Below, one piece after another: positions 680-48,585 of a DNA stretch of 64,000 bases. The notes beneath the pieces were generated by a model. That model ran no database searches, was not told where the DNA came from, and saw only the letters and a program-made list of their open reading frames with translations. A program made the translations under genes and the position numbers. The stretch lies in IMG/VR virus record IMGVR_UViG_3300037502_003770, positions 62,001 through 126,000 of that record; one strand, 5' to 3'. Within the stretch, counting starts at the first letter, position 1. Each line of letters opens with the position of its first letter.

Positions 680-2052
680 GTTTATGAAAATATTATTAAA
701 TATTTCCACTTTAAACCTTTAAGAATTTAACCTCTTAACTGTCTCGGTATTACGGATAATACCTCTATCTCCTCATGTAAACAATCGGAGATTGCATTTG
801 AATACTTCTTCATTATATTATAACTACCATTTACATCAGCATTTATAACTATCCCTTTTGAAGATTTAAATAATTTTGTTGTAATCCTACTACCCAAATA
901 ACTATCTTTCTTACATAAAGACTCATTATCTAAAAAAGAACACTTACTTGTATAAGATTCCTCTTGTCTTACAAGTTTGATTCCCTTTTCAAATAACTTG
1001 TACTCTAACATAGAAAATAATTTATAATAAGGTATCATTACAAAATTTTGATTATTTTTCTTTCCATTATTAATGTCTTGTTTCCATTCTTTATTTCTAC
1101 CTACTACTAAAGTATGATAGTTTTTTGAAACTAAATGATTCACTAATAATTTACTTATTTTATGTAAATAATCTTCTATTTTGTTATTTCTTCTTAAATT
1201 TAATTTTTCTATCCTTTTAGAAGTATAAACTCCTTTATCTAACTTACTTCTAAACTCAGCTAACTTCTTATTATAATATTGATTTATATTCTTTAATGGT
1301 TTACCATTTATTATTAAAGGTTGTTTATTATCAGAAAAAGTTAATGTTAATAAATTATTAACACCTACATCCGCTGAACACACCCTTTCTTTAGAAGATG
1401 GTTTAACAAAAAGAGATGTATCTATTTTTTTAGAATAAACAACTTCTATTACATAATATCCATATTTAGGAACAATTCTTACTTGTTTAATATTAGTTTT
1501 ATTCACTATCTTACTTTCTAATAAAATAGAAGTCATACTTAACTTAATCAACCCTTTAGAAAGAAATTTCTTATCTTTAGAAATAGCACCTTTTTCATAG
1601 GTTGTGATGTATTTTCTATTTTTATCTAAATATTTAGGAATATTAACCTTTTCATTATATTTTCCTTTTAATTTAAGTTTTAATAAAGAAAAGAAAGATT
1701 TAAAGTTTTTATCTACTAATTTTAAAGTTTGTTTAGATACTTTATCAGGTAACTCTCTATAATCAAAAGAATCTCTTACTTTATAATAGAGTTGTAAATA
1801 AGAAAGATATTTTTTTGTTTCAAAGAAATGTTGTCTTACAATAAAGAGGGCATAGTTATAGAGATTTCTACTTTTAGTACAAAGAGTTTCACATTCAGAA
1901 AAGAATTTATGATTAGGAGTTATTGTATATTTTTGTACTCTATTAACTAACATTTAAAATAAGTATATTTATATATAAATAGTAAAAATAAATTATTTTT
2001 ATTAACAGAAAGGTGTATAAAATATAATATAAAAATATTAACATTTTCAAAG
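680..2052 (-). mobile_element. Non-autonomous IS200/IS605-type (tnpB-only) element
   Basis: Boundaries inferred from restoring the host reading frame. Similar GAAAAT-containing imperfect hairpins at both ends; no tnpA. Confidence 0.7.
727..1953 (-). CDS. tnpB: RNA-guided endonuclease TnpB (IS200/IS605 OrfB, IS1341-like)
   Basis: N-terminal 'SRNLYNYALF'; RuvC motifs 'ADVGVNNL', 'QEESYTSKCS', 'INADVNGSYNI'. Confidence 0.93.
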   Translation of the reverse strand: MLVNRVQKYTITPNHKFFSECETLCTKSRNLYNYALFIVRQHFFETKKYLSYLQLYYKVRDSFDYRELPDKVSKQTLKLVDKNFKSFFSLLKLKLKGKYNEKVNIPKYLDKNRKYITTYEKGAISKDKKFLSKGLIKLSMTSILLESKIVNKTNIKQVRIVPKYGYYVIEVVYSKKIDTSLFVKPSSKERVCSADVGVNNLLTLTFSDNKQPLIINGKPLKNINQYYNKKLAEFRSKLDKGVYTSKRIEKLNLRRNNKIEDYLHKISKLLVNHLVSKNYHTLVVGRNKEWKQDINNGKKNNQNFVMIPYYKLFSMLEYKLFEKGIKLVRQEESYTSKCSFLDNESLCKKDSYLGSRITTKLFKSSKGIVINADVNGSYNIMKKYSNAISDCLHEEIEVLSVIPRQLRG

Positions 2053-2152
2053 TCTGAAATTTTAACAACATATATTAAAGGATTTTTGAATTCTTCAGAA
2101 AAAAAGTATTCTTTAAATAAAAAAGACTTATTAAAAATAAAAATTGATTTTT

Positions 2153-2704
2153 ATGAAAATAACGATTTATAATAATAACTTTCTTTATATAGAGTGTTTA
2201 ACTACAGCAGTATGTTATAATTTACATATAGATAATTTTTTTGATTCATTTAGGTATAATTACATAAATTATTTTAGTCAAAATAAATACCCTATTAGTT
2301 ATGATTTTTTGTTAAGTCTTGAAAATTATAAACAATACATTTTACCTGAAAATATTTATATCTTTCTTATAAAGAAATATAAAGATAACATCAGATATAC
2401 ATCTTCTGAATTATTTAATAAATTTGGAATAATTTATTCGTCTATTACATATAATATATGTTTAGAATTAATTAAAAATTATAGTGATTTTAAATTGAGT
2501 AAAATACCATCTAAATTTAGGGACATTAATTTATGTAAAGAAGCTTTAAAAAATAATTACTTATATTTAAGTTCAGTACCTAAAAAATTAAGAAATAATA
2601 AGGAAATACTTAATGTATATTTAGAATCTTTTATTAAATATACTAAAGAAAAATACGGTATTTCTGAAGAAAATATAGCTAAATTAAAAAACTTTTCTCT
2701 TTAA
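2153..2704 (+). CDS. YxE-leader protein with DUF4116-like repeats
   Basis: MKITIYNNNFLYIE leader; IPSKFRDINLCKEAL / VPKKLRNNKEI repeats. Confidence 0.65.
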   Translation: MKITIYNNNFLYIECLTTAVCYNLHIDNFFDSFRYNYINYFSQNKYPISYDFLLSLENYKQYILPENIYIFLIKKYKDNIRYTSSELFNKFGIIYSSITYNICLELIKNYSDFKLSKIPSKFRDINLCKEALKNNYLYLSSVPKKLRNNKEILNVYLESFIKYTKEKYGISEENIAKLKNFSL

Positions 2705-2705
2705 A

Positions 2706-3275
2706 ATGGAAATAATACTTACAAATAATATTAATTTTCTTTATATAGAAAAAGATGGTTTCCCAAATATAAGTATTTATAGTTTATATTTTGGAAATAA
2801 TCTTTCTTTTTTAGAATCTTATGCTGAAAAAAATGAATTTCGTTATTTAACTAATATTACTGCTGGTTATTTTTGGGATGTTGTAAGATATCTTACAGAT
2901 ATTAAATATATTAATAAATTAGCTGAATTTTATTCTTCTATTAATGATAGTAATAATATTTCTTTTATTCATTTAAATAGAACTTTTATAAATAAAGTTA
3001 ATAAAAAATATTTAAGTACTGAATTGTTTGAAATTATTACATCTAATAAATATTATGGTAACTCACTGAGTGATATTCCTAGTGAATTTAGGTCTTTAAA
3101 AGTATGTTTAAAATTTATTAAATCTGAACCTGAACAAATATATCATGTACCAAAACATTTAAAGAATAATAAAGAAATTATTAATACTTATATATTTCAT
3201 ACAATGGAAAATGCTTGTAGAAAATATAAGTTCTCAAAAGAAATATCAGAACAATTAAAAAACCTTTCTATATAA
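2706..3275 (+). CDS. YxE-leader protein with DUF4116-like repeats
   Basis: MEIILTNNINFLYIE; IPSEFRSLKVC; C-terminal LKNLSI shared with neighbours. Confidence 0.65.
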   Translation: MEIILTNNINFLYIEKDGFPNISIYSLYFGNNLSFLESYAEKNEFRYLTNITAGYFWDVVRYLTDIKYINKLAEFYSSINDSNNISFIHLNRTFINKVNKKYLSTELFEIITSNKYYGNSLSDIPSEFRSLKVCLKFIKSEPEQIYHVPKHLKNNKEIINTYIFHTMENACRKYKFSKEISEQLKNLSI

Positions 3276-3276
3276 A

Positions 3277-3840
3277 ATGAATCAAATAATAATATATACT
3301 GAAACTAATTTTTATGTTGAAACATATAAAACTTTATTCTTAAATAAAAAAACAAACTTACATATATGGTTTCTTTGTAATATAAATAATTTTTCTGATA
3401 ATATAATTATTAGAGATAAAAAAACTGATAAAAGATATATTAATTTAGAAATTAAAAGAAGAATATACGATAGTATTGAAAATATATTCCCATTTAAACA
3501 TGAAAAAATAAGTTTATTAATAGTAAAAAACTTTTTTGATGTAATAAAACATATCAAAGCTTTTAAATCTGTGAAAAATGTTACTTATGAAATAAGTAAA
3601 TATTTTATTGAAAATAATAAATATCAAAGATTACCAAGCATAAAAAAGAAATATAGAACGCTTGAAATTTGTAAGTTAACAATAAAAAATAATTCTACTT
3701 ATATAAGTGATGTACCTGAAGAATTATTAAATAACGAAGAAATCATAAATACATATCTACAAACTTTAATTAATGAAAATATTAAACGTGCTAAATTTTC
3801 TGAAGAAACTATAACTAAATTAAAAAACCTTTCTATATAA
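3277..3840 (+). CDS. YxE-leader protein with DUF4116-like repeats
   Basis: MNQIIIYTETNFYVE; KKYRTLEICKL, VPEELLNNEEI. Confidence 0.65.
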   Translation: MNQIIIYTETNFYVETYKTLFLNKKTNLHIWFLCNINNFSDNIIIRDKKTDKRYINLEIKRRIYDSIENIFPFKHEKISLLIVKNFFDVIKHIKAFKSVKNVTYEISKYFIENNKYQRLPSIKKKYRTLEICKLTIKNNSTYISDVPEELLNNEEIINTYLQTLINENIKRAKFSEETITKLKNLSI

Positions 3841-4376: not shown

Positions 4377-6161
4377 ATGTTCAACAAACTAACAACAACA
4401 GGGAAAGCGTTAATTGCCCTACTTATTATTGGTTTACTTATTTGTGGTAAGTTCTTTATTTTCGATAGATTACCTCAAGAAGTTCAAGAATCTCAACATT
4501 TTGGTAAAGTAAGTTTACCAGATTCACCTGAAGCATCTTTAACAGGAAATGCTGCTATTAAATTAGAATTTCCTAAAGAAACAGATGCAAATAATGGTGG
4601 TACAAAAATCATTTGGAAAATGATGGCGTGGCAAAGTCAAAATGGAATTGTTTATTCAAATGGAGGTTCTACCACTAAAGAAAATAGTCTATTTGATAAA
4701 GCTAAATTAGATGTAACACTAGAAAGACAAGATGATTGTTTTAAAAGTTGTGCAGATTTAGTAGCTTTCACTAAACAATACAAAGAAAACCCTGAAACAC
4801 CAGCTGTTTTTATTACATTTATGGGTTCTGGAATTCCAGCCTATATTTCAGGAATTTCTAAACAAGTGGAAGATTTAGGACCTGAATATCAACCAGTAGC
4901 TTTTCTAACAACTGGAAAATCTTATGGTGAAGACCAAATTATAGGTGATAAAAAATATAAAGATAATAAACAAAATCTAAAAGGTGCTACGGTTGTAGGT
5001 GTACGAATGGATGGTGATTTAGATTTAGCTTTAAAACTTTGTGGTGATAATGGAATAAAAGTAAATGTAGATGATAAAGTTTACGACCCTGAAGCTTTAA
5101 ACTTTATGTATTCAGGAACTTTCATGGATGCAGTTGTTATGTATAATAATAATTATTCTGAAACTCGAAAAATCGCTATTAATGGTAAAACAATTGGTAG
5201 AGATACAACAATTAGTGCTGATTTAGTTGCAACATGGACACCAGGCGATGTTAAAGCAAAACAAGGTAGAGGTGGTGTAACAATTATTTCCACTAAACAA
5301 TATGCGAGTATTATGCCAAATATCACAATTACTTGTAAGAAATGGCTAAACGACCACCGAATACAAGCTCAAGAAATTACAAAAGCATGTGCTATCGCAG
5401 GAGACCAAATCAGGACATTTGACGATGTTAAGAAATATGTATCTCGTTTAAATACTGATTTTTATAATGAAAAAGATGCTTCACCTGAATATTGGTACAA
5501 ATATTATAATGGTGAACAAATTGATGAAGATACGAGGTTAGGTGGTTCAATGGTATTTAACTTAGGTGATATGGCAAATATGTTAGGTATCTTCATTGAA
5601 GGACAAACAGACCATACAGATATTTATAAATCAGTTTATAATACCTTTGGTACGCTTCAAAGCAAATATTACCCTAATGATTTACCTAAATACTTAGAAT
5701 ATACTAAGGCTTTTGATAAAACAGTTTTACAAACAGTAATTAATGAAAATCCTGAATTACTCACAGGTAAAATCAATTTAATTGATTATAGTAAAACAGA
5801 AAAAGGCGACCAAATTGGTAATAAATCTTATAATATTGAATTTGCATCAGGTTCATCAGAACTTACCGAAAGTGGCAAACGAGAATTAGATGAAATTTAT
5901 ACTAATATTGTTTCAGCTGACGGTACAAAAGTAGAATTGATTGGTCATACTGATAATCAAGGTATTTCCTCTGAAAACTTATCTCTTTCTGAAAGAAGAG
6001 CCAAATCAGCACTAGAATATCTAAAACAAAAAGGTGTGGAATCTCAAAGATTAGTATCTAAAGGTAGAGGTGATAGTGAACCAGTTGCAGATAATTCCAC
6101 AAGTGCAGGTAGAGCTAAAAATAGAAGGGTAAATATTTCACTCTTTGCTATTAAAGAATAA
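4377..6161 (+). CDS. ABC-type (NitT/TauT-like) substrate-binding protein fused to C-terminal OmpA peptidoglycan-binding domain
   Basis: N-terminal TM anchor; OmpA_C motifs 'IEFASGSSEL','GHTDNQG','NLSLSERRA','GRAKNRRV'. Confidence 0.85.
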   Translation: MFNKLTTTGKALIALLIIGLLICGKFFIFDRLPQEVQESQHFGKVSLPDSPEASLTGNAAIKLEFPKETDANNGGTKIIWKMMAWQSQNGIVYSNGGSTTKENSLFDKAKLDVTLERQDDCFKSCADLVAFTKQYKENPETPAVFITFMGSGIPAYISGISKQVEDLGPEYQPVAFLTTGKSYGEDQIIGDKKYKDNKQNLKGATVVGVRMDGDLDLALKLCGDNGIKVNVDDKVYDPEALNFMYSGTFMDAVVMYNNNYSETRKIAINGKTIGRDTTISADLVATWTPGDVKAKQGRGGVTIISTKQYASIMPNITITCKKWLNDHRIQAQEITKACAIAGDQIRTFDDVKKYVSRLNTDFYNEKDASPEYWYKYYNGEQIDEDTRLGGSMVFNLGDMANMLGIFIEGQTDHTDIYKSVYNTFGTLQSKYYPNDLPKYLEYTKAFDKTVLQTVINENPELLTGKINLIDYSKTEKGDQIGNKSYNIEFASGSSELTESGKRELDEIYTNIVSADGTKVELIGHTDNQGISSENLSLSERRAKSALEYLKQKGVESQRLVSKGRGDSEPVADNSTSAGRAKNRRVNISLFAIKE

Positions 6162-6249: not shown

Positions 6250-6855
6250 ATGAAACTAACTTATTCTATTTCAGAAAATAATTATATTGGAATTAGCAAT
6301 CAAATTTTCTTTTATGAGTTACTATTTGGTTTATCTATATTAAAAAATAATACAGTTTATTTTAGCATACCTTCTTCTTATAGTGAAAGGTTATCTGAAT
6401 CATTAAAAATAATTACAGGAAATATTGAATCTTTAATAAAAGTTGATAATAAAATTAAATATGTTGATGTTATATTTTCAAGTTCTATTGAGAAAGCTGA
6501 AATATCATTTTCTTCTCATCATAAATTTAGTTTAGATATAAATGATAAATTAAATATATCTTACTTAATTGAGAGAATACAAAAATTTTCTAATTTAAAA
6601 GCATTAGAAAATATCAATGTTACTGACGAAACAATGGAACTTTCAGAAGGCTCCGTTGCTTTATTAAAAACAGCTTTAGAAAAATTAGAACCTTCTATTC
6701 AAGAAGCTATTTTATTAAATGATATACCTACTTTATTGAAAATTGCTTTAGTAAATAAACTATATAGATTAGTTGATACTAATTTAGAATTTGATAATAT
6801 TCTAAAAGTAGAAGATATTGCAACAGCTTTACAATTTTTACCTAGATTAAATTAA
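6250..6855 (+). CDS. Hypothetical protein
   Basis: 201-aa ORF downstream of a promoter. Confidence 0.6.
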   Translation: MKLTYSISENNYIGISNQIFFYELLFGLSILKNNTVYFSIPSSYSERLSESLKIITGNIESLIKVDNKIKYVDVIFSSSIEKAEISFSSHHKFSLDINDKLNISYLIERIQKFSNLKALENINVTDETMELSEGSVALLKTALEKLEPSIQEAILLNDIPTLLKIALVNKLYRLVDTNLEFDNILKVEDIATALQFLPRLN

Positions 6856-6856
6856 T

Positions 6857-7791
6857 ATGAAGGATGATATTTTTTTACAAATTGATATAAATACTGGTCA
6901 CACAAAATACTTTGAACGTGACAGTAAATTTAATTTAAAACTTTCTTTAATTATTATTTATTTTACAGAAGAGACTTTTTTGAATAAAAATGGTTTGTAT
7001 CTTTTACTTATAATGAAAGATGGTAAAACCATTTTCTTTAAAGATTTTAGACATCAAAAAATAATTTATTATGTTGGAAATTAGTATATATTATAATTAT
7101 ACAACTTACAATGAAATTTTTGATATTAGCGTATTGAAATCATGTCTTAATATACAGATAAAAGAATATATAGTTTTCCATGAATATATACAATCTTTTT
7201 CTAAGTTAATTTCATATTATAATAAAAATCTTCGTAACTTAAAATATTATGTTAATAAAAATTAAACTCTCAGAACATTGTTTTTATATTGAGGATTCTT
7301 TATACTCAAGACCTTTTACAAGAAGGAACTTTGCTTTTGATTTAATTTTAAATAATTTTAATGAAATAACATATTTTTTCAATAATAATTTTTATTTAAC
7401 ATGTAATATAAATAAAAATAATATTGAATATTTTGATATTTCACTAATGACTGGTATTAAAAATTTTCTTAATTTAACGCATTATATACCAACATAAATG
7501 TTAGACATTATTTTATATATAGATTGCTTTCAATATATTGAGGCAACAATAGTGGATATCGGTTCACCAAAAAAAATCTTATTTAGATTAGATTTAAATA
7601 ATAAAAATAGAATTTTTATTGAAATAAATAGATTTTCTTTAAAGAAAGGTTATTTTTCATTAATTAACTTTATAAAAGAACGCAAAATTTTATTTAATGA
7701 TTTAGATTATATAAATATTTTAGATTTAAAATATTATTTTAAAATATCAAATTCTATCAAAGAGAAAGATTCTCACCTTGCTTTTCTCTGA
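6857..7791 (+). repeat. Four tandem small YxE-leader / LKYY-type paralogous ORFs (6857, 7071, 7249, 7498)
   Basis: Shared Y-x-E leader and YY-containing ends; overlapping or abutting start/stop. Confidence 0.7.
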
Positions 7792-9072
7792 ATTTAACTG
7801 AAAAACTTTATAAGAATGTAAACATTCTTCAATAGAAACTCTATATCTCATTTTAGAGTTTTTTATTTTAAGGTAAACTTCCTTCCAATCCTTACAATTA
7901 ATAAAAGTTTCCTTCCATTGGTCTTTTATTAACAGATTTGGATAAAAATTTCCCTTATTTCTTTTAATTATACATTCTATTCCCCTGCGTAAAATTTCTA
8001 TTGAGGCATTAACAGCATCGCTGTAATCATATTGCAAATTGCCTATAATAGATGAATACGCAGGATTTATTCTGTATAATTTAATATCTTCAATAAATAA
8101 CCTTTTTGAAAGATTTTCTATAAAAAGATTTCTTTTCCAAAGGTTATTATTTTTTCTATTATATTTTCTTCCTTGACCAGCATTTTTACTTTTAAAAGAT
8201 AAGTCTTCAATAAAAACCGCTTTACAATTATAATACTTTGCAACTAAAGAAATCTTCTTAGAGATTTCAATTACTTCATGTTTAATTTTATTCTGAAAGT
8301 ACTTTGCTTCTTGAGAATCAGTTGATAATTTTAAGGAAATAAATTTATCAGTTAGTTCTTTTAAAGAAAACTCTTGGCAATGAATAAGTTTATCATCTTC
8401 CATAATAGAAATACCTATATTATTAGGATTCATATCTATCCCTAAATATCTTTCTTTTGAAGGGAGAAATTTCTTTTCTTGAGATTTAAATTCTTCAAAA
8501 GAAATATAAATGTATTTTAAATCAAGTTTTACAGAAAATTTATAACCATTCTCAAAACAATCAATATCATTTAATTCCTCAAGTTTAAATAATTCCTTTT
8601 TAATATTTCTTCTTAAAGAAGGGAGGTATAAAGGAATATGTAAATTTCTATTTACTTTAAAAGTGATTTTATTGTTATCAATAATATCTAATTCAAAATA
8701 AGTATTTCCTTTATTAGATGTTGTTCCTTGACAAGTAATAGGTGATAATTTATTTATTTTAAATTCATCATTACTTATCTTACCTTTACATCTTTCATAA
8801 AAGTTATTCTTTCCACCAAAAATAACTTTTTGATTTTGAAATCTTGTATGAACATCTTTTCCTTCTAAAATAGCGTATTCTATTTGTTTAGAATTAAGCT
8901 TTCCAATATTATTTAAACCTTTAAGTAAAGATTTCATTTCTTTAATATCTGTTATCCCTTCAAAATATCTATTATATGAAAACCTTATTACAGAAGAGAA
9001 TTGTTTCATTAAAGAATGGATTTCTTTTAATGAATTTACATCAGTAGTATAAGGCATTTTAATAGTTTTCAA
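7747..9072 (-). CDS. tnpB: TnpB-related RNA-guided nuclease, Zn-finger-less type, copy A (TTG start)
   Basis: RuvC-I YLGIDMN, RuvC-II FIEDL, INPAYSSIIG, RuvC-III SDAVNASIEI. Confidence 0.85.
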   Translation of the reverse strand: MKTIKMPYTTDVNSLKEIHSLMKQFSSVIRFSYNRYFEGITDIKEMKSLLKGLNNIGKLNSKQIEYAILEGKDVHTRFQNQKVIFGGKNNFYERCKGKISNDEFKINKLSPITCQGTTSNKGNTYFELDIIDNNKITFKVNRNLHIPLYLPSLRRNIKKELFKLEELNDIDCFENGYKFSVKLDLKYIYISFEEFKSQEKKFLPSKERYLGIDMNPNNIGISIMEDDKLIHCQEFSLKELTDKFISLKLSTDSQEAKYFQNKIKHEVIEISKKISLVAKYYNCKAVFIEDLSFKSKNAGQGRKYNRKNNNLWKRNLFIENLSKRLFIEDIKLYRINPAYSSIIGNLQYDYSDAVNASIEILRRGIECIIKRNKGNFYPNLLIKDQWKETFINCKDWKEVYLKIKNSKMRYRVSIEECLHSYKVFQLNSEKSKVRIFLFDRI

Positions 9073-9176
9073 AAGTCTTTAATGTTTATTATAAATAGTA
9101 AAAATAAATTATTTAGTATATAATTTTATAACGAATTTAATATATAAATGTATTTATAAAATAAACTTTTCAAAAA

Positions 9177-9398
9177 ATGAAAATATTTATAGGAAATTGG
9201 TTGTTCACTTATGAAGAAATTAATTTAAAAGGTAAAATTGAAGTTTACTTTTGTATTCATTCTTTATATAACAGTCTTTTTATTTATCAACAAAAATCAA
9301 AAAAATTAACTATTTTAACTATAAATGATAATATAAAAAGAATAAGTTTTAGTCGTTATACTCTTAATGTTCATAATTTAAACTATTATATAAACTAA
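9177..9398 (+). CDS. Small YxE-leader/LKYY family protein
   Basis: MKIFIGNWLFTYEE ... NLNYYIN. Confidence 0.6.
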   Translation: MKIFIGNWLFTYEEINLKGKIEVYFCIHSLYNSLFIYQQKSKKLTILTINDNIKRISFSRYTLNVHNLNYYIN

Positions 9399-10210
9399 TG
9401 AAAAAATTATTATTACCATCTTTTATAGAAAAACCTTCTTTTAAAATAATACTTATCTCAAGTATTATTCAGTTTGTTTTAGCTATTTTATTTCTTGAAT
9501 ATAATGGTAATGAGGTATTACCTAAACCAAGTAAAGTTTTACATTCTTTGTATAGTATAGTTATTAGTAAAGATTTTATCTTTGATTTTGTTGCAACATT
9601 ATCTATGATATTTAAGAGTATGTCGATAGCTATTTTAATATCATTATTCTTTATATATTTAAGTTTAATACCTATATTTAGAAATATGGCACAATTCATT
9701 TCTAAATTAAGGTTTTTAACTTACACAGGTTTAGTATTTGTATTTACTGTTATTTTTCATAATGGTTCAGACATTAAACTATCTCTATTCTTATTTGCTA
9801 TTATTCCTTATTTTGTAACATCTTTACTTTCTTATGTAAAAGATATACCACAAAAAGAATATGAGTTAGCTTATACTTTAAAATTTAATGAATTTAAAAC
9901 ATTATATGAAGTAGTAATAAAAGGTCAATTACATACAGTATTTGAAGTAATAAGACAAAACTTTGCAATAGCATGGATGATGATTACAAGCGTTGAAGCA
10001 TACTCTATGAGTGAAGGAGGTTTAGGAACCATGATGATTAAATCAAATAAATATTTAGATATGAATAGTGTTTTTGCTGTATTAATAATAATTTTAATAC
10101 TTGGAATATTCTTTGATTATTTATTTGATGTTTTAAAAGTGTTCTTCTTTCCATATACAAATATAAAAAGGTATGAAAATTTTTGGATAAATAAACTTTT
10201 TAAGAAATGA
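9398..10210 (+). CDS. ABC transporter permease (NitT/TauT/SsuC-like)
   Basis: Multiple TM segments, 'LPKPSKV', EAA-like region, 'AWMMITSVE...GGLG'. Confidence 0.85.
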   Translation: MKKLLLPSFIEKPSFKIILISSIIQFVLAILFLEYNGNEVLPKPSKVLHSLYSIVISKDFIFDFVATLSMIFKSMSIAILISLFFIYLSLIPIFRNMAQFISKLRFLTYTGLVFVFTVIFHNGSDIKLSLFLFAIIPYFVTSLLSYVKDIPQKEYELAYTLKFNEFKTLYEVVIKGQLHTVFEVIRQNFAIAWMMITSVEAYSMSEGGLGTMMIKSNKYLDMNSVFAVLIIILILGIFFDYLFDVLKVFFFPYTNIKRYENFWINKLFKK

Positions 10211-11352
10211 TAAATATCTTTACAGAAAACTTCTTTTATTTAGAAGGTGGTGTCGAAAACCCAATACTTCATATAAGAAAATATACTACTTTCTTATATT
10301 TTAATATAAATATTGTAGATTATTTTATAGAAAAACTACGTAATTTTAAAGTTGTTTTATATCATTTTGGTGAATATAATTTCTTTAATTTAAAATATGA
10401 TGCTCAAGTAAACATATTATATTATTTACAAATTAGTATAAAAAAATCTATTCTTAATAAACTTTCTTTTCCTTTAGCTAAGTTTATCTATGATTCTGCA
10501 CAAATAGGTGGTAAACTTAGTGGTAAAATAAAAGCTAGTCATGTACCAAATAAATACCTTTTTCCAAAATGATACAAATATTTAATGAAAACTTCTTTTA
10601 TTTAGAAGGTGGTTTACAAGATAATGTATATGATAGAATACTAAGTTGTTTTATCTACTTTAATTCTTTCATTCACGATTATTTTATTAGTAAATTTGAT
10701 AAAAATAAAGTAGAACTAAATTTATATCATTTTGAGATATATAATAAGATAGAACTAAATAGAAGTTATAAAAAAATTCCTTATGAAATAACATTTACTT
10801 TAAATAAATTTTTTGTAAAAAAAGCTTCTTTTTCTTTAGTAACAAATATTTACAAATATGCAATATCTTGTGGAAATATTAAGAAAACTAACTTACCAAA
10901 GAAATTTCAAAATTTATGTTAATAAAAATAGAATTTTCAAACAACAATAATTATTTTGAAACGGAAGTAGGAAGGTTTTATTTTCATTTTACTATAACCT
11001 TTTATTATGAATGTGTTCATATTCTTGAAAGTACATTAAATTATATTTATATTAAATATAATAATGAATATTTATATAAAAATTTTCAAAATATTAATAA
11101 ACTTAATTTAAAATATTATTAGTAATTATGTATACTTATATTATAATAATAGAATTATCAAACGATATTAATTATTATGAAAGAGAGCAATTTGCGAGTT
11201 TTTATTTTCATTTTGTAATATCTTGTATTTATTATGAATGTATGCGCTTTAATGAGAGTTTAATATTAATTTATATTGAACATAACGATAAAGATTTATA
11301 TAATTATTATAAAAATATTAACAAACTTAATTTAAAATATTACTTGTTTTAA
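10207..11352 (+). repeat. Four YxE-leader ORFs (10207/10569 pair; 10916/11128 LKYY pair) between permease and ATPase
   Basis: FxENFFYLEGG shared by the first pair; NINKLNLKYY shared by the second pair. Confidence 0.7.
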
Positions 11353-11370
11353 AAAAACCATTTTCAAAAA

Positions 11371-12162
11371 ATGATTACTTACAAAAAAGAAGAACTTATT
11401 TTATCAGTAAATGACCTTTCTGTAAAGTATGGTGATAAACAAATATTAAAAGATATTTCTTTTGATATTCATAATATTACAAGACCAAATCTTACTCAAG
11501 GACAAATCATATCTATTTGTGGTAGAAGTGGTTGTGGTAAAACATCTTTATTTAAAACTATATCAGGTTTTTTAAAACCAACAACAGGAACTATAAAAAT
11601 AGGTGTTGAACAAAAAGATGTAATTATGGGTGAGGTTGGTGTTATTCAACAAGATTATCCTTTATTTAATCATAGAACTGTTTATGAAAATCTTTCTCTT
11701 AGTTTAAAAAACGTTAAGACAGATAACGAAAAGAAAGAAAAAATACATCATTATTGCGATTTATTTAATCTTTTGGAACATTTAAATAAATACCCTTCAC
11801 AACTATCAGGTGGTCAAAGACAAAGAGTATCTATATTACAACAGGTATTAACTGAAAATAAGTTTATTCTTATGGATGAACCATTTTCAGGATTAGATGT
11901 TTTAATGAAAGATAAAGTTATTGAACTTATGTTAAAGGTTTCAAATCTTGATGAAATGAATACTTTAATAATAGTTTCTCATGATATTGAATCATCTTGC
12001 GCTATTTCTGATACTGTACATATTTTAGCAAATAAAGATAATACAGGCTCTACAGTTGTTAAATCATATGACTTTCTAAAAGAAAATCTTGCTTATAGAA
12101 AAGATATTAAAGATGATTATAATTTCAAAAGAATTATTAATGAAATAAAAAGTTTAATCTAA
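11371..12162 (+). CDS. ABC transporter ATP-binding protein (NitT/TauT-like)
   Basis: Walker A GRSGCGKT, signature LSGGQRQR, Walker B ILMDEPF, H-loop SHD. Confidence 0.95.
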   Translation: MITYKKEELILSVNDLSVKYGDKQILKDISFDIHNITRPNLTQGQIISICGRSGCGKTSLFKTISGFLKPTTGTIKIGVEQKDVIMGEVGVIQQDYPLFNHRTVYENLSLSLKNVKTDNEKKEKIHHYCDLFNLLEHLNKYPSQLSGGQRQRVSILQQVLTENKFILMDEPFSGLDVLMKDKVIELMLKVSNLDEMNTLIIVSHDIESSCAISDTVHILANKDNTGSTVVKSYDFLKENLAYRKDIKDDYNFKRIINEIKSLI

Positions 12163-14254
12163 TGCAGATACTTATTTATTTAGAAAGGCATTCAAAATAT
12201 TTTGAATATTATTATGATAATTCTTTTGAAGAAAGTTTAGTATTTGAAATTAGAACATCTTTTTCGTTTGAATTTGTTAAAAATTTTATAATAGAAATAT
12301 GGGAAAAAAATAATGATTCTTGGTATTATTATAATAAATTAAAATATTACGTATGTTAAATATAGGTATTATTATTTTAAATAATGATTTTCGTTATTAT
12401 GAATATTTTATTGGTATATTTGTTTTTGAAATTGATAATTTTGTTTTTTCTGAAACTTTTGAAATTGGTTATCATATTAGACTAGAAAGTTTAAGAAAAA
12501 ACGGTAAGCGTTATTTTATTGCAAATGTTTTTAATTTAAAATATTACTTATGATAAGAATAAATTTTAATAATGGTCTTTATGAAGAATGGTTACATAAT
12601 TGTAATATATATACTTTTGTTACTTTAGTGTATTATTTTGAATGTGTAAGCTTTTTAAATTCAAGTTTTCAAATTAATGAATTAAAATTTAAAGGGAATT
12701 ATTTTTATTATAAAAATATTAATCTTCTTAATTTAAAATATTACTTATGATTCATATTTTTTCTCTTAATAAAAACATTTTTTATTCAGAAAAATTTATA
12801 TTTAATGCTGATGTATTTCTTGTTCGTTTAAATATTAATAATTATGTTGAAAGTATTATGTTTGATTATAATTTTATTCTATTAGAAATGGAATATTCGA
12901 TGTTTATAGAAATTAATAAACTTCTTAAATTAAAATATTATTTAAGTTATTACTTATGGCTGTAAATATATATTTAACAAATTCTTCTTATAGGGAAAGA
13001 CAACATGAATATTATATTAGTAATATATTTCATAATGAAAATACTATTTTCAGTTCGATATATTCTTTACAATTAGCATCTTTAATAAAAAATAAAATCT
13101 TTTATTATTCAATAGTACAAAAATATAATACTGTTTTAAAATTAAAATATTATTTATGGGAATAAAAATTTGTTTTAACAATACTACATGGAATTTTTAT
13201 ATTGAATTTTTTTCTTATAAAGAGTGTATTTTCACTATTAAAATTTTATCTAATTTAATAACATCTACATTAATTGGAAATAAATTACAAGATGTTGTTT
13301 TAAAAATAAAAAATAATACACTATTAACAACTGATTCCATTAAAAACGTTACCACTAATGTTCTTAATTTAAAATTTTATATATGATAATAAGTATTAAA
13401 ATTTCTAATAATAATTTTTCTTATGACGAAAATATTTCCAGTATTTATGATAATACTATAATAACTAACTTATGGATTTTTAAATGTTTTGAAGATAGAA
13501 TTTTTATTAACACAATAAATCAAATAATAGAAATGATTTACTATATTACAATTAATAATTTCACAGTATACAGTAATAATAAATATTATAAAACTTAAAG
13601 AACTAAAATGAGAATAAATATTAAAATAAAAACATATTTCTTTAAATATGAAGAATTTAATTTAGTAGATGAAAATATGATAACTCATCTAGACCTTTCA
13701 AATATCTTTTATTTTGAAAGAAGTTATTTTTCTTTAAATGTAGATAATTATAAAATATATGCAATTTATAAAAATAGATTTCTTTATTTTGAAAATCGTG
13801 ATGTTAATTTACTTAAATTAAAATATTATCTATGAGATTACAAATTGTTTTTAATTTTGGAGGTTATTATAGTGAACTTGATAAATATGTAATTGTTTAC
13901 ATTTATCCAAAATATTATGATATTTATTTTAATGATGTATTTTATTATATTGATTCAAATATAAAATTAATAGAAGTAAGGCATTTAAACAGCAAAAAAT
14001 ATTCTCGTGAATATAAAGATTTCATTTTAAAATACTATACATAATGAAGATAGAAATTAAATCAACATATTTTACGTATTATGAAAGACTTGGTTATGAT
14101 GTTCAAAATTATTTTTCTTTAAATTTAGATTGGATTTTTTTTAGAAGATATAGATTTATATAAAAATGAATTTATTATGAATTTTGTAGGTTTTGGTCAA
14201 AAATGTTTTTATTCAAAAAATAGTAATTTACTTAAATTAAAATATTATATATAA
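12162..14254 (+). repeat. Tandem array of ten ~65-76 aa YxE-leader/LKYY paralogs (last one frameshifted)
   Basis: ORFs at 12162,12353,12550,12747,12956,13156,13383,13608,13832,14044; period about 200-230 bp. Confidence 0.8.
14044..14254 (+). pseudogene. LKYY-family ORF with +1 frameshift in T8 tract (14135-14142)
   Basis: Removing one T gives MKIEIKSTYFTYYE...NLLKLKYYI*. Confidence 0.7.
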
Positions 14255-14258
14255 AATA

Positions 14259-15581
14259 TTAAATTCTTTCAAAGACAAAAGTTTTCACCTTGCTTTTCTC
14301 TGAACTTAACTGAAAAACTTTATAAGAATGCAAACATTCTTCAATAGAAACTCTATATTTCAATTTAGAGTTTTTTATTTTAAGAGAAATTTCTTTCCAA
14401 TCTGTACATTTAATAAAAGTTTCCTTCCAACGGTCTTTTATTAACAAATTGGGATAAAAATTTCCCTTATTTCTTTTAATTATACATTCAATTCCTCTGC
14501 GTACAATTTCTATTGAGGCATTAATAGCATCAGTATAATCATGTTGCAAATTGCCTATAATAGACGAATACGCAGGATTAATTCTGTATAATTTAATATC
14601 TTCTATGAATAACCTTTTACTTAAATTTTCAAAAAACAGATTCCTTTTCCAAAGGTCATTATTTTTTCTGTTATATGTTTTTCCCTTACCAGCGTCTTTT
14701 TGTTTAAATGATAAATCTTCAATAAAAACTGCTTTACACTTATAATATTTTGCAAGTAATGAAATCTTTTTTGAAATTTCAATTACTTCATGTTTAATTT
14801 TATTCTGAAAGTACTTTGCTTTTTCAGAATCAGTAGATAGTTTTAAAGAAATAAATTTATCAGTTAATTCCTTTAAAGAAAACTCTTGACAATGAATAAT
14901 TTTATCATCTTCCATTATAGATATACCTATATTATTGGGATTCATATCTATTCCTAGATACCTTTCTTTTGAAGGAAATTTCTTTTCTTCATATTTAAAT
15001 TCTTCAAAAGATATATAAATATATTTTAAGTCAAGTTTTACACAAAATTTATATCCTTTCTCACCAAACTTTATATCATTTAATTCTTGAAGTTTAAATA
15101 ATTCTTTTTTAATATTCTTTCTTAAAGAAGGAAGGTATAAAGGTATATGCACATATTTATTTACTTTAAATATAATTTGATTATTATCAATTATATCTAA
15201 ATTAAAATAAGAATTTCCTTTATTATTAGTTATTCCTTGACACGTAATAGGTGAAAGTTTATTTATTTTAAATTCATCTTTACTTATTTTAGCTTTACAC
15301 CTTTCATAAAAATTATTCTTTCCTCCGAAAATAACCTTTTCATTTTGAAATCTTGTATAAACATCTTTTCCTTCTAAAATAGCATACTCTATTAGTTTAG
15401 AATTAAGTTTATTTATATTATTTAAATTAGAAAGTAAAAATTTTATTTTCTTAATATCAGATATCCCTTCAAAATATCTATTATAGGAGTACCTTACTAC
15501 AGAGGAGAATTGTTTCATCAAAGAATGAATTTCTTTTAATGAAGTATCATCTGTAGTGTAAGGCATTTTAATAGTTTTCAA
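14259..15581 (-). CDS. tnpB: TnpB-related RNA-guided nuclease, copy B
   Basis: Close paralog of 7747-9072; D/E/D RuvC residues present. Confidence 0.85.
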   Translation of the reverse strand: MKTIKMPYTTDDTSLKEIHSLMKQFSSVVRYSYNRYFEGISDIKKIKFLLSNLNNINKLNSKLIEYAILEGKDVYTRFQNEKVIFGGKNNFYERCKAKISKDEFKINKLSPITCQGITNNKGNSYFNLDIIDNNQIIFKVNKYVHIPLYLPSLRKNIKKELFKLQELNDIKFGEKGYKFCVKLDLKYIYISFEEFKYEEKKFPSKERYLGIDMNPNNIGISIMEDDKIIHCQEFSLKELTDKFISLKLSTDSEKAKYFQNKIKHEVIEISKKISLLAKYYKCKAVFIEDLSFKQKDAGKGKTYNRKNNDLWKRNLFFENLSKRLFIEDIKLYRINPAYSSIIGNLQHDYTDAINASIEIVRRGIECIIKRNKGNFYPNLLIKDRWKETFIKCTDWKEISLKIKNSKLKYRVSIEECLHSYKVFQLSSEKSKVKTFVFERI

Positions 15582-15627
15582 AAGTCTTTAATGTTTATTA
15601 TAAATAGTAAAAATAAATATAATTTTT

Positions 15628-15671: not shown

Positions 15672-15745
15672 GGACCTATAGCGCAACTGGTCAGAGCAGC
15701 TGACTCATAATCAGCAGGTTTCAGGTTCAAATCCTGATAGGTCCA
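15672..15745 (+). tRNA. tRNA with CAT anticodon, most likely tRNA-Ile2 (lysidine, reads AUA); CCA not encoded
   Basis: Cloverleaf GGACCTA/TAGGTCC, GCTGA-CTCATAA-TCAGC, TCAGG-TTCAAAT-CCTGA. G1-C72 excludes initiator; C4-G69/C5-G68 as in Ile2. Confidence 0.9.
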
Positions 15746-15763
15746 CTTTAAAATTTTATAAAA

Positions 15764-16621: not shown

Positions 16622-17761
16622 ATGGAAAATAGAAATCAAAAATGGGTCATTGATGATAATCAAGCTATGTGCTTTAATGGTTCTATCGTTAAGGATAGTT
16701 TACCTAAAGCGGTATATCTTTTAAAATATGAAAAGATGATAGGTATGTTTTTAGAAAAAGTATCTGATAATTTTATATTTAACCATGAATTATATAATAG
16801 TGGTTCTGATAGAATTATTAAAAGATGCGTTAATTCTTGGAATAAATCAGAAACAAACTTAGGTATTCTTTTTAATGGTCTTAAAGGTTCAGGTAAAAGC
16901 GTTACTGCAAAACTTATTTGTAATGAAATTAATTTACCTGTTATATTAATAAATAAAAATATAGGTGATATTTCTGAATATATCAATAATATACAGCAAG
17001 ATATTATTATTTTTATAGATGAATTTGAAAAGATATTTCCTTATCAAATGCACAGTAGAAATAATGAAGATGATAAAGCTAATAAAGATAGTAATATGTT
17101 ACTTTCTTTAATGGATGGTGCATTTACTTCTGAATATAAAAGATTATTTATTGCAACAACTAACACTCTTATAATAAACCCTTTTCTTTTAGAAAGACCT
17201 TCTCGTTTTAGATATACTTTTAATTTTACAAATGTTGATAATACAACATTAAATGAATTAATAGATAAATTATTAGTTAATAAAGAATTTGAAACGGATT
17301 TAATTGAAACAATTAATACATTAGAAAATTATTCAGTTGATACTGTAATTTCTATTATTAAAGAAATGAATTTATATAATGAAAAAGCTAGTGATTTTAT
17401 AGATTTCTTTAATGTTAAAAGAAAAGATAGTGAAACTTATGATATATATGAAATGAATGATGATGGTACTTATGAGTTAGCTATTAATCATACAACATCA
17501 CTTGATTATTTTTCAAAATCAAGAAACGATAATAAAAGAAAAGATATTATTTATGAAACTACTAAATTTGGTGGTTGGCTTTATGAAATTATTCATTACG
17601 AAAATGGTAATATAAAAGCTTATAAATATGAATACGATGAAGATGATAATAATAACAGAATTAAAGATAATGATGGTAAAGATATTATCTTTAAGTTAAA
17701 AGCTGTTAAAAAATCAAATTACACTCGTTATAGTGGTGATAGTAGTACAGTAGCTTTTTAA
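16622..17761 (+). CDS. AAA+ ATPase
   Basis: Walker A GLKGSGKS, Walker B IIFIDEFEK, 'LLSLMDG', sensor TTN, R-finger RPSRF. Confidence 0.9.
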   Translation: MENRNQKWVIDDNQAMCFNGSIVKDSLPKAVYLLKYEKMIGMFLEKVSDNFIFNHELYNSGSDRIIKRCVNSWNKSETNLGILFNGLKGSGKSVTAKLICNEINLPVILINKNIGDISEYINNIQQDIIIFIDEFEKIFPYQMHSRNNEDDKANKDSNMLLSLMDGAFTSEYKRLFIATTNTLIINPFLLERPSRFRYTFNFTNVDNTTLNELIDKLLVNKEFETDLIETINTLENYSVDTVISIIKEMNLYNEKASDFIDFFNVKRKDSETYDIYEMNDDGTYELAINHTTSLDYFSKSRNDNKRKDIIYETTKFGGWLYEIIHYENGNIKAYKYEYDEDDNNNRIKDNDGKDIIFKLKAVKKSNYTRYSGDSSTVAF

Positions 17762-22381: not shown

Positions 22382-22654
22382 ATGGAAAAAATAGAACTGC
22401 AAGAAGTGGAAATTATGGATGAAGATACTATTTCTTCAAAACAAATAGTCCTTTATAATGACGATTTCAATACATTTGATAATGTTATTAAATGTTTAAT
22501 GGTTTATTGTAAACATGTGTATGAACAAGCACTACAATTTGCTATGCAAGTGCATGAAAAAGGTAGATGTTCCGTTAAAGAGGGTTCATATAAAGAATTA
22601 AAACCTATTTGCGAGGCTTTACTTGAGAAAGGTTTATCAGCTCAAATAGAATAA
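22382..22654 (+). CDS. clpS: ATP-dependent Clp protease adaptor ClpS
   Basis: LYNDDFNTFDNV ... EQALQFAMQVHEKGRC; Bacteroidota-type short form. Confidence 0.92.
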   Translation: MEKIELQEVEIMDEDTISSKQIVLYNDDFNTFDNVIKCLMVYCKHVYEQALQFAMQVHEKGRCSVKEGSYKELKPICEALLEKGLSAQIE

Positions 22655-24139: not shown

Positions 24140-24935
24140 ATGTTTATAAAAATAATTATAACAACAAATACATTTTTCTATTCTGAATGTATTACTAGTA
24201 TATATGGGAATGGTAGTAGTTTATTATATTGTGAATATATCAATAGTCAATACTGTTTTAATTTTGAAAAAGCTACTGAATGGAATGCTTATTTCAAAAT
24301 TAATGAAAATTTATGGATTACTTTTCAATTACCTATGTCAGATTTTCATTTAAATGATGTGTATTTATTTTTAGACTTTCGTGATAAACATTCATATAAT
24401 AATTTATCTAATTTTTTTAAAAAATTTAAACCAAATGAATATAAATATTAATACAGAACATTGTTTTTATCAAGAAATTAATTATTATTTAGAATATAAT
24501 ATTAAACCAATTTTTATTTTAATAAATAAGTTTTTTTCTGAGGAATGGTTTCTTCCTTTAATTGGTATAACTTATTTTTATAATAATTTATTTCATAATA
24601 AAACAGTTAAATCTTTAAGAAAAACTCATCTTTATGAATATATATTATTAAGTTTTTTACGTATTAGGATGAAACTTGATAAATTAAATAAAACCACAAT
24701 AAAACAAAGTGTTGATAATTTTATTCATCATACACATATAACATATTATACAGAAAATATTTGTAAAGAATTAATAAAATATTATGGTATTGAAATTATT
24801 AAATTTTTACCAAATAAATTCTTTACTAAAAAACTGTATATTTTTATGTATGATTTATTAGGCAATGAATTGCTTTCTTTACATAAAATATCAAATTCTT
24901 TCAAAGACAAAGGTTTTCACCTTGCTTTTCCTTGA
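24140..24935 (+). repeat. Two YxE-leader ORFs (24140; 24435, whose 3' end runs into tnpB copy C)
   Basis: MFIKIIITTNTFFYSE; MNININTEHCFYQE. Confidence 0.6.
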
Positions 24936-26219: not shown

Positions 26220-26316
26220 AAGTATTTAATGTTTATTATAAATAGTAAAAATAAATTATTCTTTTAACAAATAGAAGTCTTTTCTGTATTATAAAATAAT
26301 AAACATTTATAAAAAA

Positions 26317-48584: not shown

Positions 48585-48585
48585 A

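What the first reader, a model, noticed from the sequence alone, without database searches (positions are those of the whole stretch)
6857..14254. Array of ~70-aa mini-proteins with conserved ends (YxE ... LxLKYY) and scrambled interiors
Seen: about 17 ORFs, ten strictly consecutive (12162-14254) with a ~200-230 bp period. Only the termini are conserved, and synonymous or conservative changes (tac/tat, LKFY, LNYY) point to protein-level selection. Inference: each gene may encode one beta-rich unit whose terminal strands pair with neighbours, giving combinatorial hetero-oligomers, or a panel of variable binders on a fixed scaffold.
Basis: partly seen in the sequence, partly recalled or inferred. 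Interest (0 to 1): 0.7.

Follow-up and report, generated by a model that had tools for sequence, protein, structure and literature searches.

The report
Shuffling mini-gene cassette array in jumbo phage
An uncultivated T4-like giant phage carries about 17 tiny, tightly packed genes of one orphan family, alike only at their two ends and swapped as whole units between strains; they are real genes, but what their proteins do is unknown.

Summary
The window is part of a 313-kb, 22% GC, T4-superfamily phage genome from groundwater and freshwater metagenomes. Between and after the three genes of a phage-borne ABC transporter lie 16 intact and one broken ORF of 64-97 aa. Two 117/121-aa ORFs may be extended members.

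The ORFs are real coding genes:
- The run of open frames is far beyond chance.
- Codon usage is gene-like in the annotated frame.
- Orthologue pN/pS is 0.37, against 0.01-0.12 for the transporter genes.

Between paralogues only the ends are conserved: M-x-I-x-I ... [F/Y]-Y-x-E at the start and N-x-L-N-L-K-Y-Y at the finish. Interiors cannot be aligned, yet each interior is conserved between strains as well as the ends are.

The family has no relative among 1.84 billion representative proteins, and more distant phage relatives have the transporter genes contiguous. Strains differ by whole cassettes, with breakpoints at gene junctions. Two TnpB-type IS copies have replaced eight cassettes and one cassette.

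Best reading: a lineage-specific hyperplastic cassette array that evolves by recombination at its conserved coding junctions. Its function is unknown; I infer a host-interaction repertoire. One AlphaFold model (pLDDT 80) shows a six-strand beta meander; a second member failed (pLDDT 43). Hetero-oligomerisation is unsupported.

The parts
4377..6161 (+). Context: ABC-transporter substrate-binding protein fused to an OmpA domain (594 aa). It is the first gene of the invaded operon.
   Evidence: Pfam OmpA at E 3.5e-21. The orthologue lies directly upstream of the permease in L001. pN/pS 0.12.
6250..6855 (+). 201-aa orphan gene that precedes the first mini-gene block. It is absent from the operon of the distant relative L001.
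   Evidence: pN/pS 0.17.
6857..7084 (+). Mini-gene, 75 aa. C-terminal end is the degenerate form ...KIIYYVGN.
   Evidence: HMM E 1.6e-13. Orthologue in L013 is 97% identical.
7071..7265 (+). Mini-gene, 64 aa. It overlaps the previous gene by 14 nt.
   Evidence: HMM E 5.7e-6. The L013 orthologue is only 64% identical with pS 0.40. An X3 contig shows this interval replaced.
7249..7497 (+). Mini-gene, 82 aa.
   Evidence: HMM E 4.9e-15. Orthologue P0015.
7498..7791 (+). Mini-gene, 97 aa. The residues after ...LDLKYYF are read from the inserted IS; the native end in relatives is DKTLIP.
   Evidence: The X3 empty-site contig continues past 7740 with the native end.
7741..9108 (-). IS copy 1: a TnpB-type (IS605 OrfB family, PF27229) element with a 441-aa ORF at 7747-9072. 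It takes the place of eight mini-gene cassettes present in L013.
   Evidence: Three copies at 86-89% nucleotide identity. More than 1000 homologues named IS605 OrfB. Boundary and deletion shown.
9177..9398 (+). Mini-gene, 73 aa. Its stop overlaps the permease start by 1 nt.
   Evidence: HMM E 1.2e-11. Orthologue P0009.
9398..10210 (+). Context: ABC-transporter permease.
   Evidence: Pfam BPD_transp_1. pN/pS 0.01.
10207..10922 (+). Two paralogous ORFs of 121 and 117 aa (10207-10572 and 10569-10922). They have a mini-gene-like start (MINIFTENFFYLE) and an internal FFNLKY. They may be extended family members, but this is not statistically supported.
   Evidence: They are paralogues of each other by BLAST. 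The HMM aligns end to end, but the score is not significant. pN/pS 0.43 and 0.45.
10916..11122 (+). Mini-gene, 68 aa.
   Evidence: HMM E 7.1e-16. The positional counterpart in L013 is only 47% identical.
11128..11352 (+). Mini-gene, 74 aa.
   Evidence: HMM E 4.8e-16. Orthologue P0005.
11371..12162 (+). Context: ABC-transporter ATPase.
   Evidence: Pfam ABC_tran at E 7.7e-29. pN/pS 0.05.
12162..14044 (+). Nine consecutive intact mini-genes: 12162-12359, 12353-12553, 12550-12750, 12747-12965, 12956-13165, 13156-13386, 13383-13598, 13608-13835 and 13832-14044. Seven of the junctions overlap by 1-10 nt.
14045..14254 (+). Broken tenth copy. It has a premature stop near 14162, and its LKLKYYI end lies in another frame.
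   Evidence: The intact 69-aa orthologue is at L013 17439-17648.
14254..15618 (-). IS copy 2 (440-aa ORF at 14259-15581). It takes the place of exactly one cassette, L013 17645-17878.

Best explanation
This is a lineage-specific, tandemly expanded family of genuine small protein genes. It forms a hyperplastic cassette array inside and behind a phage-borne ABC-transporter operon of a T4-superfamily jumbo phage.

Shown:
- The ORFs are coding and under moderate purifying selection.
- They are packed with 1-17-nt stop/start overlaps on one strand.
- Paralogues share only an N-terminal segment (M-x-I-x-I ... [F/Y]-Y-x-E) and a C-terminal segment (N-x-L-N-L-K-Y-Y).
- Each cassette's interior is nevertheless conserved between strains.
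- Strains differ by whole cassettes that are gained, lost, duplicated or replaced, with breakpoints at gene junctions.

Inferred:
- The genes are co-transcribed and translationally coupled with the transporter genes.
- The near-identical junction DNA (C-terminal codons, stop/start overlap, N-terminal codons) is the substrate for homologous or unequal recombination that expands and shuffles the array. This would work as PeSL motifs do in T4-type hyperplastic regions, but embedded in coding sequence.
- The last codons are doubly constrained, because they are also the G-poor, A-rich initiation region of the next gene.

Most speculative: the products are a diversified repertoire of small beta-rich cytoplasmic proteins. 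The shared ends would form a common structural or docking element and the divergent cores would give different host targets (takeover or anti-defence).
For: Phage context:
- Virus record of 312,694 bp, 96% complete.
- T4 gp21-type protease at E 1.7e-28 and Gp23 capsid protein at E 2.2e-59.

Coding:
- ORF run against shuffles.
- Coding log-likelihood of +0.30 to +0.71 bits per codon in frame for all 16, and negative out of frame.
- Pooled pS 0.150 and pN 0.055, ratio 0.37. Termini give 0.34 and interiors 0.40. Controls give 0.01-0.12.
- In-frame 18-bp and 3-bp indels in L009.

Orphan status:
- An exhaustive profile search of 1.84e9 proteins gave 14 hits, all from this phage or its near relatives.
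- Nothing in Pfam or PHROGs.

Invasion of the operon: L001 has the binding protein, permease and ATPase contiguous. None of L001-L008 has a mini-gene.

Cassette dynamics:
- L013 has 13, 3 and 12 mini-genes where the window has 5, 2 and 10.
- The ATPase stop is joined directly to the w12550 start in X2 and in a 4215-bp X4 contig. X2 also shows a tandem duplication of one unit, and the interval 10200-11367 is replaced in X4.
- A cassette is replaced between 7084 and 7376 in X3.
- Two positional pairs are only 34% and 47% identical.
- pS differs between cassettes (chi-square 39.7, df 13, p 1.6e-4).

Junction DNA: position-specific codons (TTA in 15 of 17, AAA in 14 of 17, CTT in 8 of 17 against 16% genome usage). 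The phage has no Shine-Dalgarno motif and its upstream regions are A-rich and G-poor.

Published parallels: PeSL-mediated modular shuffling in T4-type phages (PMC2839356) and T-even internal proteins that share only a targeting sequence (PMC3012670).
Against: - No expression evidence: no RNA run was listed.
- The fold is uncertain: pLDDT 80 for one member, 43 for another, and 0.38 by ESMFold.
- Structural searches gave only generic beta-meander matches.
- The host-interaction function is pure inference from size, orphan status and turnover.
- pN/pS of 0.37 is weak constraint. The composition is driven strongly to AT-only codons: I, Y, N, L, F and K make up 64% of residues. The proteins could therefore be marginally functional.
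- Many short-sided joints may be conserved-motif cross-matches rather than true recombinants.
- Synonymous divergence is higher at the termini (0.20) than in interiors (0.115). This argues against simple DNA-level purifying selection on the junctions, although ectopic conversion would produce it.
Confidence: 0.55

Rival explanations
1. Each gene makes one beta unit whose conserved N- and C-terminal strands pair with those of neighbouring products, giving combinatorial hetero-oligomers or a closed multi-subunit beta assembly.
For: - Both conserved ends have the alternating hydrophobic pattern of beta strands.
- The C-terminal LKLKYYL tail is not packed in the monomer model (pLDDT about 51), as expected for a strand that needs a partner.
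- The genes are co-located and probably co-translated.
Against: - The homodimer prediction gave no answer (score 0.00, fold pLDDT 30-48). That is neither support nor refutation.
- Strains vary freely in cassette number and identity. This is hard to square with a defined stoichiometric assembly.
- One copy is broken without visible compensation.
Confidence: 0.12
2. Internal-protein analogy. The conserved N-terminus is a capsid-targeting propeptide that ends in a prohead-protease site (Y-x-E). The variable remainder would be packed in the head and ejected into the host as anti-defence proteins, like T-even IPI-III.
For: - The phage encodes a T4 gp21-type protease and a Gp23 capsid protein.
- T-even internal proteins are a highly diverse set that share only the targeting sequence (PMC3012670).
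- Giant-phage head paralogues share N-terminal propeptides of about 15 residues ending in x-X-E (PMC5694885).
- [F/Y]-x-E lies at residues 7-24 in 43 of 44 family members.
Against: - The phage's own presumptive protease substrates use [L/I]-x-E. The scaffold protein has 19 such motifs and no Y-x-E, and the capsid protein has no Y-x-E.
- The N-terminal 18 residues form two strands of the predicted sheet rather than a detachable tag.
- The equally conserved C-terminal motif is left unexplained.
- The genes sit in an operon with transporter genes, not with head genes.
Confidence: 0.1
3. Junction-centred element. What is selected is the repeated junction, acting as a recombination, initiation or coupling signal. 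The ORFs between junctions are passengers kept open only so that ribosomes reach the downstream transporter genes, and the proteins have no function of their own.
For: - Only the junction-proximal parts are conserved among paralogues.
- The C-terminal motif uses position-specific codons, and a C at position -18 is kept even when the amino acid differs.
- Stop/start overlaps are kept even in cassette-deletion variants; the joined form keeps an ATGA overlap.
- Composition is extremely AT-driven.
Against: - Interiors are under the same purifying selection as the termini between strains (0.40 against 0.34).
- The ten copies downstream of the last transporter gene have nothing to couple to.
- There is no conserved RNA structure at the junctions (mean z about 0).
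- Loop lengths in the N-terminal motif vary by whole codons, which fits protein-level rather than DNA-level conservation.
Confidence: 0.12
4. Programmed -1 frameshifting. The conserved T_TTA_AAA heptamer in the C-terminal motif lets ribosomes slip into the next ORF, which lies in the -1 frame, producing beads-on-a-string fusion proteins.
For: - AAT TTA AAA is a formal X_XXY_YYZ site. It is never written with synonymous codons in the 14 L-K cases.
- In the second and third blocks the next ORF is always in the -1 frame, with overlaps of 1, 4, 7 or 10 nt. No stop intervenes.
Against: - In the first block the next ORF is in the +1 frame, with overlaps of 8-17 nt.
- Six of 17 motifs read AAA TTA AAA, which breaks the heptamer.
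- There is no downstream stimulatory structure.
- TTA and AAA are the dominant codons anyway.
- ATGA-type overlaps put the next gene in the -1 frame trivially.
Confidence: 0.03

Closest known systems
Hyperplastic regions of T4-type phages with PeSL (promoter-early stem-loop) cassettes (Arbiol et al. 2010, PMC2839356; Comeau et al. 2014, PMC4122927)
   Same: Both occur in T4-superfamily phages. Both are runs of small non-essential ORFans that differ between close strains by insertion, deletion and replacement of whole genes. In both, the exchange points lie at short conserved sequences that flank each gene.
   Different: Here the conserved flanks are the genes' own first and last codons, not intergenic promoter-terminator modules. 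There are no intergenic spacers and no stem-loops. All cassettes belong to one protein family.
T-even internal proteins IPI, IPII and IPIII and their polymorphic loci (Rao and Black 2010, PMC3012670)
   Same: Both are small phage proteins that share only a short conserved terminal segment and are otherwise highly diverse. Both occur in a phage with a gp21-type prohead protease.
   Different: The motif is Y-x-E rather than [L/I]-x-E. A second conserved segment exists at the C-terminus. There are 17-30 tandem copies. No evidence of packaging exists.
Gene 'accordions' and multigene families of large DNA viruses, such as poxvirus K3L amplification (recalled from my own knowledge, not checked here)
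   Same: Both show tandem copy-number change by unequal recombination followed by divergence, in genes thought to face host defences.
   Different: Copies here are anciently diverged (about 25% identity), and no selective agent is known.
Integron gene-cassette arrays
   Same: Both are unidirectional arrays of small, mostly orphan genes that vary cassette by cassette between strains.
   Different: This array has no attC sites and no intergenic DNA. No tyrosine integrase is present in the genome.

Membership tests
T-even internal proteins (capsid-targeted, gp21-processed) | A short conserved N-terminal targeting sequence shared by otherwise unrelated proteins | tested here: met
   The N-terminal M-x-I-x-I ... 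[F/Y]-Y-x-E segment is conserved while interiors cannot be aligned.
T-even internal proteins (capsid-targeted, gp21-processed) | A cleavage site of the phage's prohead protease ([L/I]-x-E for gp21-type) at the end of the targeting sequence | tested here: inconclusive
   A gp21-type protease is present. However, the motif has Y at P3. The scaffold protein has 19 [L/I]-x-E and no Y-x-E, and the capsid protein has no Y-x-E.
T-even internal proteins (capsid-targeted, gp21-processed) | Presence in the virion and ejection into the host | not testable with these tools
   This needs virion proteomics.
PeSL regulatory cassettes of T4-type hyperplastic regions | An intergenic sigma70-like early promoter followed by a stem-loop terminator | tested here: not met
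   The genes overlap or abut, so there is no intergenic spacer. Junction folds are no more stable than shuffles (mean z -0.03).
PeSL regulatory cassettes of T4-type hyperplastic regions | Insertions, deletions and replacements between close strains, bounded by the repeated motif | tested here: met
   Whole-cassette differences with junction breakpoints.
Integron cassette array | attC recombination sites and an IntI tyrosine integrase | tested here: not met
   No Phage_integrase match in the 313-kb genome. There is no intergenic DNA or conserved hairpin.
Any described protein family (Pfam, PHROGs, PDB, AFDB, BFVD) | Significant sequence or fold similarity | tested here: not met
   - Pfam: none.
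- PHROGs: best E 0.026 for single members.
- Foldseek against PDB, AFDB and BFVD: E at least 0.08.
- VIA-align: best Z 6.3, below the noise level of 7-8.

The most novel reading that the evidence does not exclude
The array may be a self-shuffling library. The conserved coding termini would act at once as a protein 'handle', as the translation-coupling signal, and as the recombination site. The phage population could then duplicate, swap and diversify small effector cassettes in frame. These effectors could be ejected, internal-protein-like anti-defence proteins. On this reading the array is a coding-embedded counterpart of PeSL or integron cassettes.
Probability: 0.2. Interest if true: 0.7.

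Novelty: new variant of a known kind. Interest (0 to 1): 0.45.

Why it matters
Hyperplastic regions are where large phages keep fast-evolving, mostly unknown host-interaction genes. This array gives an unusually clean natural example. It is a single orphan family with 17-30 copies, its unit boundaries are precise, and its variation can be tracked in environmental strains. It also shows that the exchange points can lie inside coding sequence.

If the products prove functional, they would form a new family of small phage proteins. They would also be a tractable system for studying how new phage genes are born, diversified and lost.

Tried and rejected
- Homodimer prediction of w13608: no answer. 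The score was 0.00 with a poorly folded chain, so it is evidence neither for nor against binding.
- Second AlphaFold job, on w13156 with 24 sequences: pLDDT 43. A common fold could not be established.
- Fold searches against PDB, AFDB clusters, BFVD and VIA-wide: only generic beta-meander matches. ESM Atlas gave no usable hit.
- Searches for the relative's DNA in metagenome contigs and viral contigs with P0003: nothing. blastn against phage GenBank records: no match. DNA was finally obtained through the look-up of encoding contigs (L009 and L013).
- Alternative genetic code rejected. Successive ORFs are in different frames, so reading through TGA would not fuse them. Conserved genes are intact under table 11.
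- T4 late-promoter motif TATAAATA: not enriched (152 and 129 observed against about 177 expected).
- Host inference from the ATPase: only generic ABC hits at 24-34% identity in cellular genomes.
- RNA evidence: no RNA run was listed.
- Extra family copies elsewhere in the genome: none.
- The idea that the TnpB-type IS targets the LKYY motif was not pursued. Two of three copies abut the motif on their right-end side, but the third does not. In this IS family the target is expected on the other flank; that point rests on my own knowledge.

Full report
**Context.**
The window is bases 62,001-126,000 of a single 312,694-bp virus record. CheckV puts it at 96% complete. It is 22% GC, has six tRNAs and no rRNA. 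It encodes a T4 gp21-type prohead protease (Peptidase_S77, E 1.7e-28) and a Gp23-type major capsid protein (E 2.2e-59). It is therefore a T4-superfamily jumbo phage. Its DNA is held by subsurface, freshwater and aquatic metagenomes. Gene starts have no Shine-Dalgarno motif; the upstream regions are A-rich and G-poor. Nearly all genes in the window are on the + strand.

**The observation.**
Sixteen intact ORFs of 64-97 aa lie at the stated coordinates. A seventeenth copy, at 14045-14254, is broken by a stop near 14162. In the run 12162-14254 the starts are 191-227 bp apart and neighbours overlap by 1, 4, 7 or 10 nt.

- Nine ORFs of at least 60 aa cover 92% of that stretch. Shuffles of the stretch give 0.08 such ORFs on average and never more than two.
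- An HMM of the 16 scores every member at E 4e-19 to 6e-6. The next ORF in the genome scores E 0.008, so the family is confined to this region.
- The alignment shows M-x-I-x-I-x-(hydrophobic), a turn, [F/Y]-Y-x-E, and at the far end N-x-L-N-L-K-Y-Y.
- Interiors are truly unrelated by sequence. Leave-one-out HMMs built from interiors alone fail for 13 of 16 members. Interior DNA cannot be aligned except within the subgroup w10916/w11128/w12550.

**Are they genes?**
Yes, on four lines of evidence.

- All 16 have gene-like codon usage in the annotated frame (+0.30 to +0.71 bits per codon, against 0.61 +/- 0.22 for 100-199-aa ORFs). The score is strongly negative in the other frames.
- L013 is a 29-kb contig of a close relative that carries the whole region without IS elements. 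It allowed codon-level comparison of 14 orthologue pairs. Pooled pS is 0.150 and pN 0.055, a ratio of 0.37.
- In the same comparison the permease gives 0.01, the ATPase 0.05, an AAA ATPase 0.08 and the binding protein 0.12. The mini-genes are thus constrained, but much less than the neighbouring enzymes.
- Termini (0.34) and interiors (0.40) are equally constrained between strains. Each cassette's divergent interior is therefore itself maintained. Indels between strains are in frame.

**Origin and distribution.**
An exhaustive profile search of 1.84 billion representative proteins found 14 hits, all from this phage or its near relatives. Pfam and PHROGs give nothing.

Eight more distant jumbo phages carry the same ABC transporter (permease 34-63% identical, 34-50% GC, 190-480 kb) but have no mini-genes. 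In L001 the binding protein, permease and ATPase are contiguous and the last two overlap by ATGA. The mini-genes, the 201-aa gene and the 121/117-aa pair are thus insertions into a formerly compact operon, specific to the 22% GC lineage.

**Dynamics.**
L013 has 13 mini-genes before the permease (the window has 4, then an IS, then 1). It has 3 between permease and ATPase (the window has 2) and 12 after the ATPase (the window has 9 plus 1 broken).

Contigs from other metagenomes show further variants:
- The ATPase stop is joined directly to the start of the w12550 cassette, which preserves a stop/start overlap. This is seen in X2 and in a 4215-bp X4 contig.
- X2 shows a tandem duplication of one unit.
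- The permease-ATPase interval is replaced in X4.
- The interval 7084-7376 is replaced in X3.

Two positional counterparts are only 47% and 34% identical. Synonymous divergence varies from 0 to 0.40 between adjacent cassettes (chi-square 39.7, df 13, p 1.6e-4). These results point to mosaic, cassette-wise histories.

Decayed cassettes occur in both strains (window 14045-14254; L013 16561-16896). Many short-sided joints may only be cross-matches of the conserved motif, so I rely on the long-sided ones.

**The junction.**
The C-terminal motif is written almost identically in every copy: AAT nTT CTT AA[T/A] TTA AAA TAT TA[T/C]. TTA occurs in 15 of 17 copies, AAA in 14 of 17, and CTT in 8 of 17 against a 16% genome usage of that Leu codon. 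A C at position -18 is kept even when the residue is Q, R or H. These codons lie 3-15 nt upstream of the next start, in the zone where this phage avoids G, so dual coding explains part of the pattern.

The N-terminal motif shows whole-codon loop-length variation and mixed ATA/ATT codons, which indicates protein-level conservation. Junctions have no RNA structure beyond shuffles. I infer that these near-identical stretches of 20-40 nt are the recombination substrates behind the cassette turnover. That is how PeSL motifs act in T4-type hyperplastic regions (PMC2839356). Higher pS at termini than in interiors (0.20 against 0.115) would fit ectopic conversion between paralogous ends.

**IS elements.**
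Three copies of a 1.37-kb element are present at 86-89% nucleotide identity. Each encodes a 440-aa protein of a large family annotated as IS605 OrfB (PF27229, more than 1000 homologues). Copy 1 starts right after ...TATTATTTT at 7740 and replaces eight cassettes. Copy 2 starts after ...TATTATATAT at 14253 and replaces exactly one cassette. An X3 contig shows the empty site for copy 1. The genome has no Y1 transposase and no tyrosine integrase.

**Structure and function.**
AlphaFold2 with the 16-sequence alignment gives w13608 a six-strand up-and-down beta sheet (pLDDT 80, pTM 0.63) with the C-terminal motif poorly placed. A second member reached only pLDDT 43, and ESMFold gives 0.38. Fold searches return only generic beta meanders. 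The homodimer job gave no verdict.

The proteins have no signal peptide or membrane segment. They are very rich in I, Y, N, L, F and K (64% of residues) and their pI ranges from 5 to 9.5. Function therefore remains inferred. Given their small size, orphan status, rapid turnover and accessory-region position in a T4-like phage, a diversified host-interaction repertoire is the most likely role.

The internal-protein analogy is attractive: T-even internal proteins share only a capsid-targeting sequence (PMC3012670), and giant-phage paralogues share propeptides ending in x-X-E (PMC5694885). It is weakened because this phage's scaffold and capsid proteins carry [L/I]-x-E and never Y-x-E. The analogy also does not explain the C-terminal motif.

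**Verdict.**
The feature is real and correctly described. It is a new orphan family arranged as a cassette array that behaves like a T4-type hyperplastic region, with coding-embedded exchange points. Interest is moderate. The biology of the products is open, and proteomics would resolve most of it.

Noticed in passing
window 7741-9108, 14254-15618, 24884-26260 (all - strand): Three copies of a 1.37-kb mobile element at 86-89% nucleotide identity. Each encodes a 440-aa protein with no hit in the local Pfam copy, but with more than 1000 homologues tagged PF27229 or 'IS605 OrfB family transposase'. The genome has no TnpA. Two copies abut the LKYY end of a mini-gene and have replaced cassettes. 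The left-end flanks of copies 2 and 3 share TTTTAACAAAT.
   Followed up: partly
window 727-1953 (-); paralogues at genome 22209-23447 (+) and 195915-197117 (-): A canonical TnpB (OrfB_IS605 plus the Cas12f1-like TNB domain) is present in three copies. It is unrelated by BLAST to the 440-aa element protein.
   Followed up: partly
window 2144-3840, 40005-42457 and 14 further sites genome-wide: A 22-member paralogue family. The one member scanned against Pfam (window 2144-2704) carries DUF4116 repeats. It is the largest BLAST-linked family in the phage.
   Followed up: no
window 4377-6161, 9398-10210, 11371-12162; L001-L008: A phage-borne ABC transporter whose substrate-binding protein is fused to an OmpA domain. 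The permease is conserved across at least eight other jumbo-phage contigs (40 kb fragments to 482 kb, 34-50% GC). The full three-gene operon was checked only in L001.
   Followed up: partly
window 37370-38467, 43409-46219, 48306-48867, 59306-59823, 61001-62116: Several other small tandem paralogue pairs and quartets of 80-110-aa ORFs. Local duplication of small genes is a general habit of this genome region.
   Followed up: no
whole genome (235 gene starts): No Shine-Dalgarno motif (GGAG in 0 of 235). A peaks at positions -14 and -13, and G falls to 3-6% upstream of starts. This suggests a host with SD-independent initiation, such as Bacteroidota. That host assignment is an inference.
   Followed up: partly
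L013 10704-10964: One cassette of the relative's array (86 aa) carries a signal-peptide-like hydrophobic segment (MSKLLIKTILLFFLFTNLSFA) between a family-like start and a YIYGN end. It may be a secreted variant or captured cargo.
   Followed up: no
window 15672-15746; L013 17936-18010: A tRNA-Met (CAT) lies immediately downstream of the array in both strains. In the window it lies about 50 nt from the left end of IS copy 2.
   Followed up: partly
window 16622-17761, 22382-22654, 23262-24071, 33891-34943: Accessory genes downstream of the array: an AAA ATPase, a ClpS adaptor homologue, an SPFH/Band 7 protein and an RNA ligase.
   Followed up: no
window 12162-14254, C-terminal motifs: The conserved codons AAT TTA AAA form a formal -1 slippery heptamer (T_TTA_AAA), and the next ORF lies in the -1 frame. 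This is probably a coincidence of codon bias and ATGA-type overlaps, but it was not tested.
   Followed up: partly
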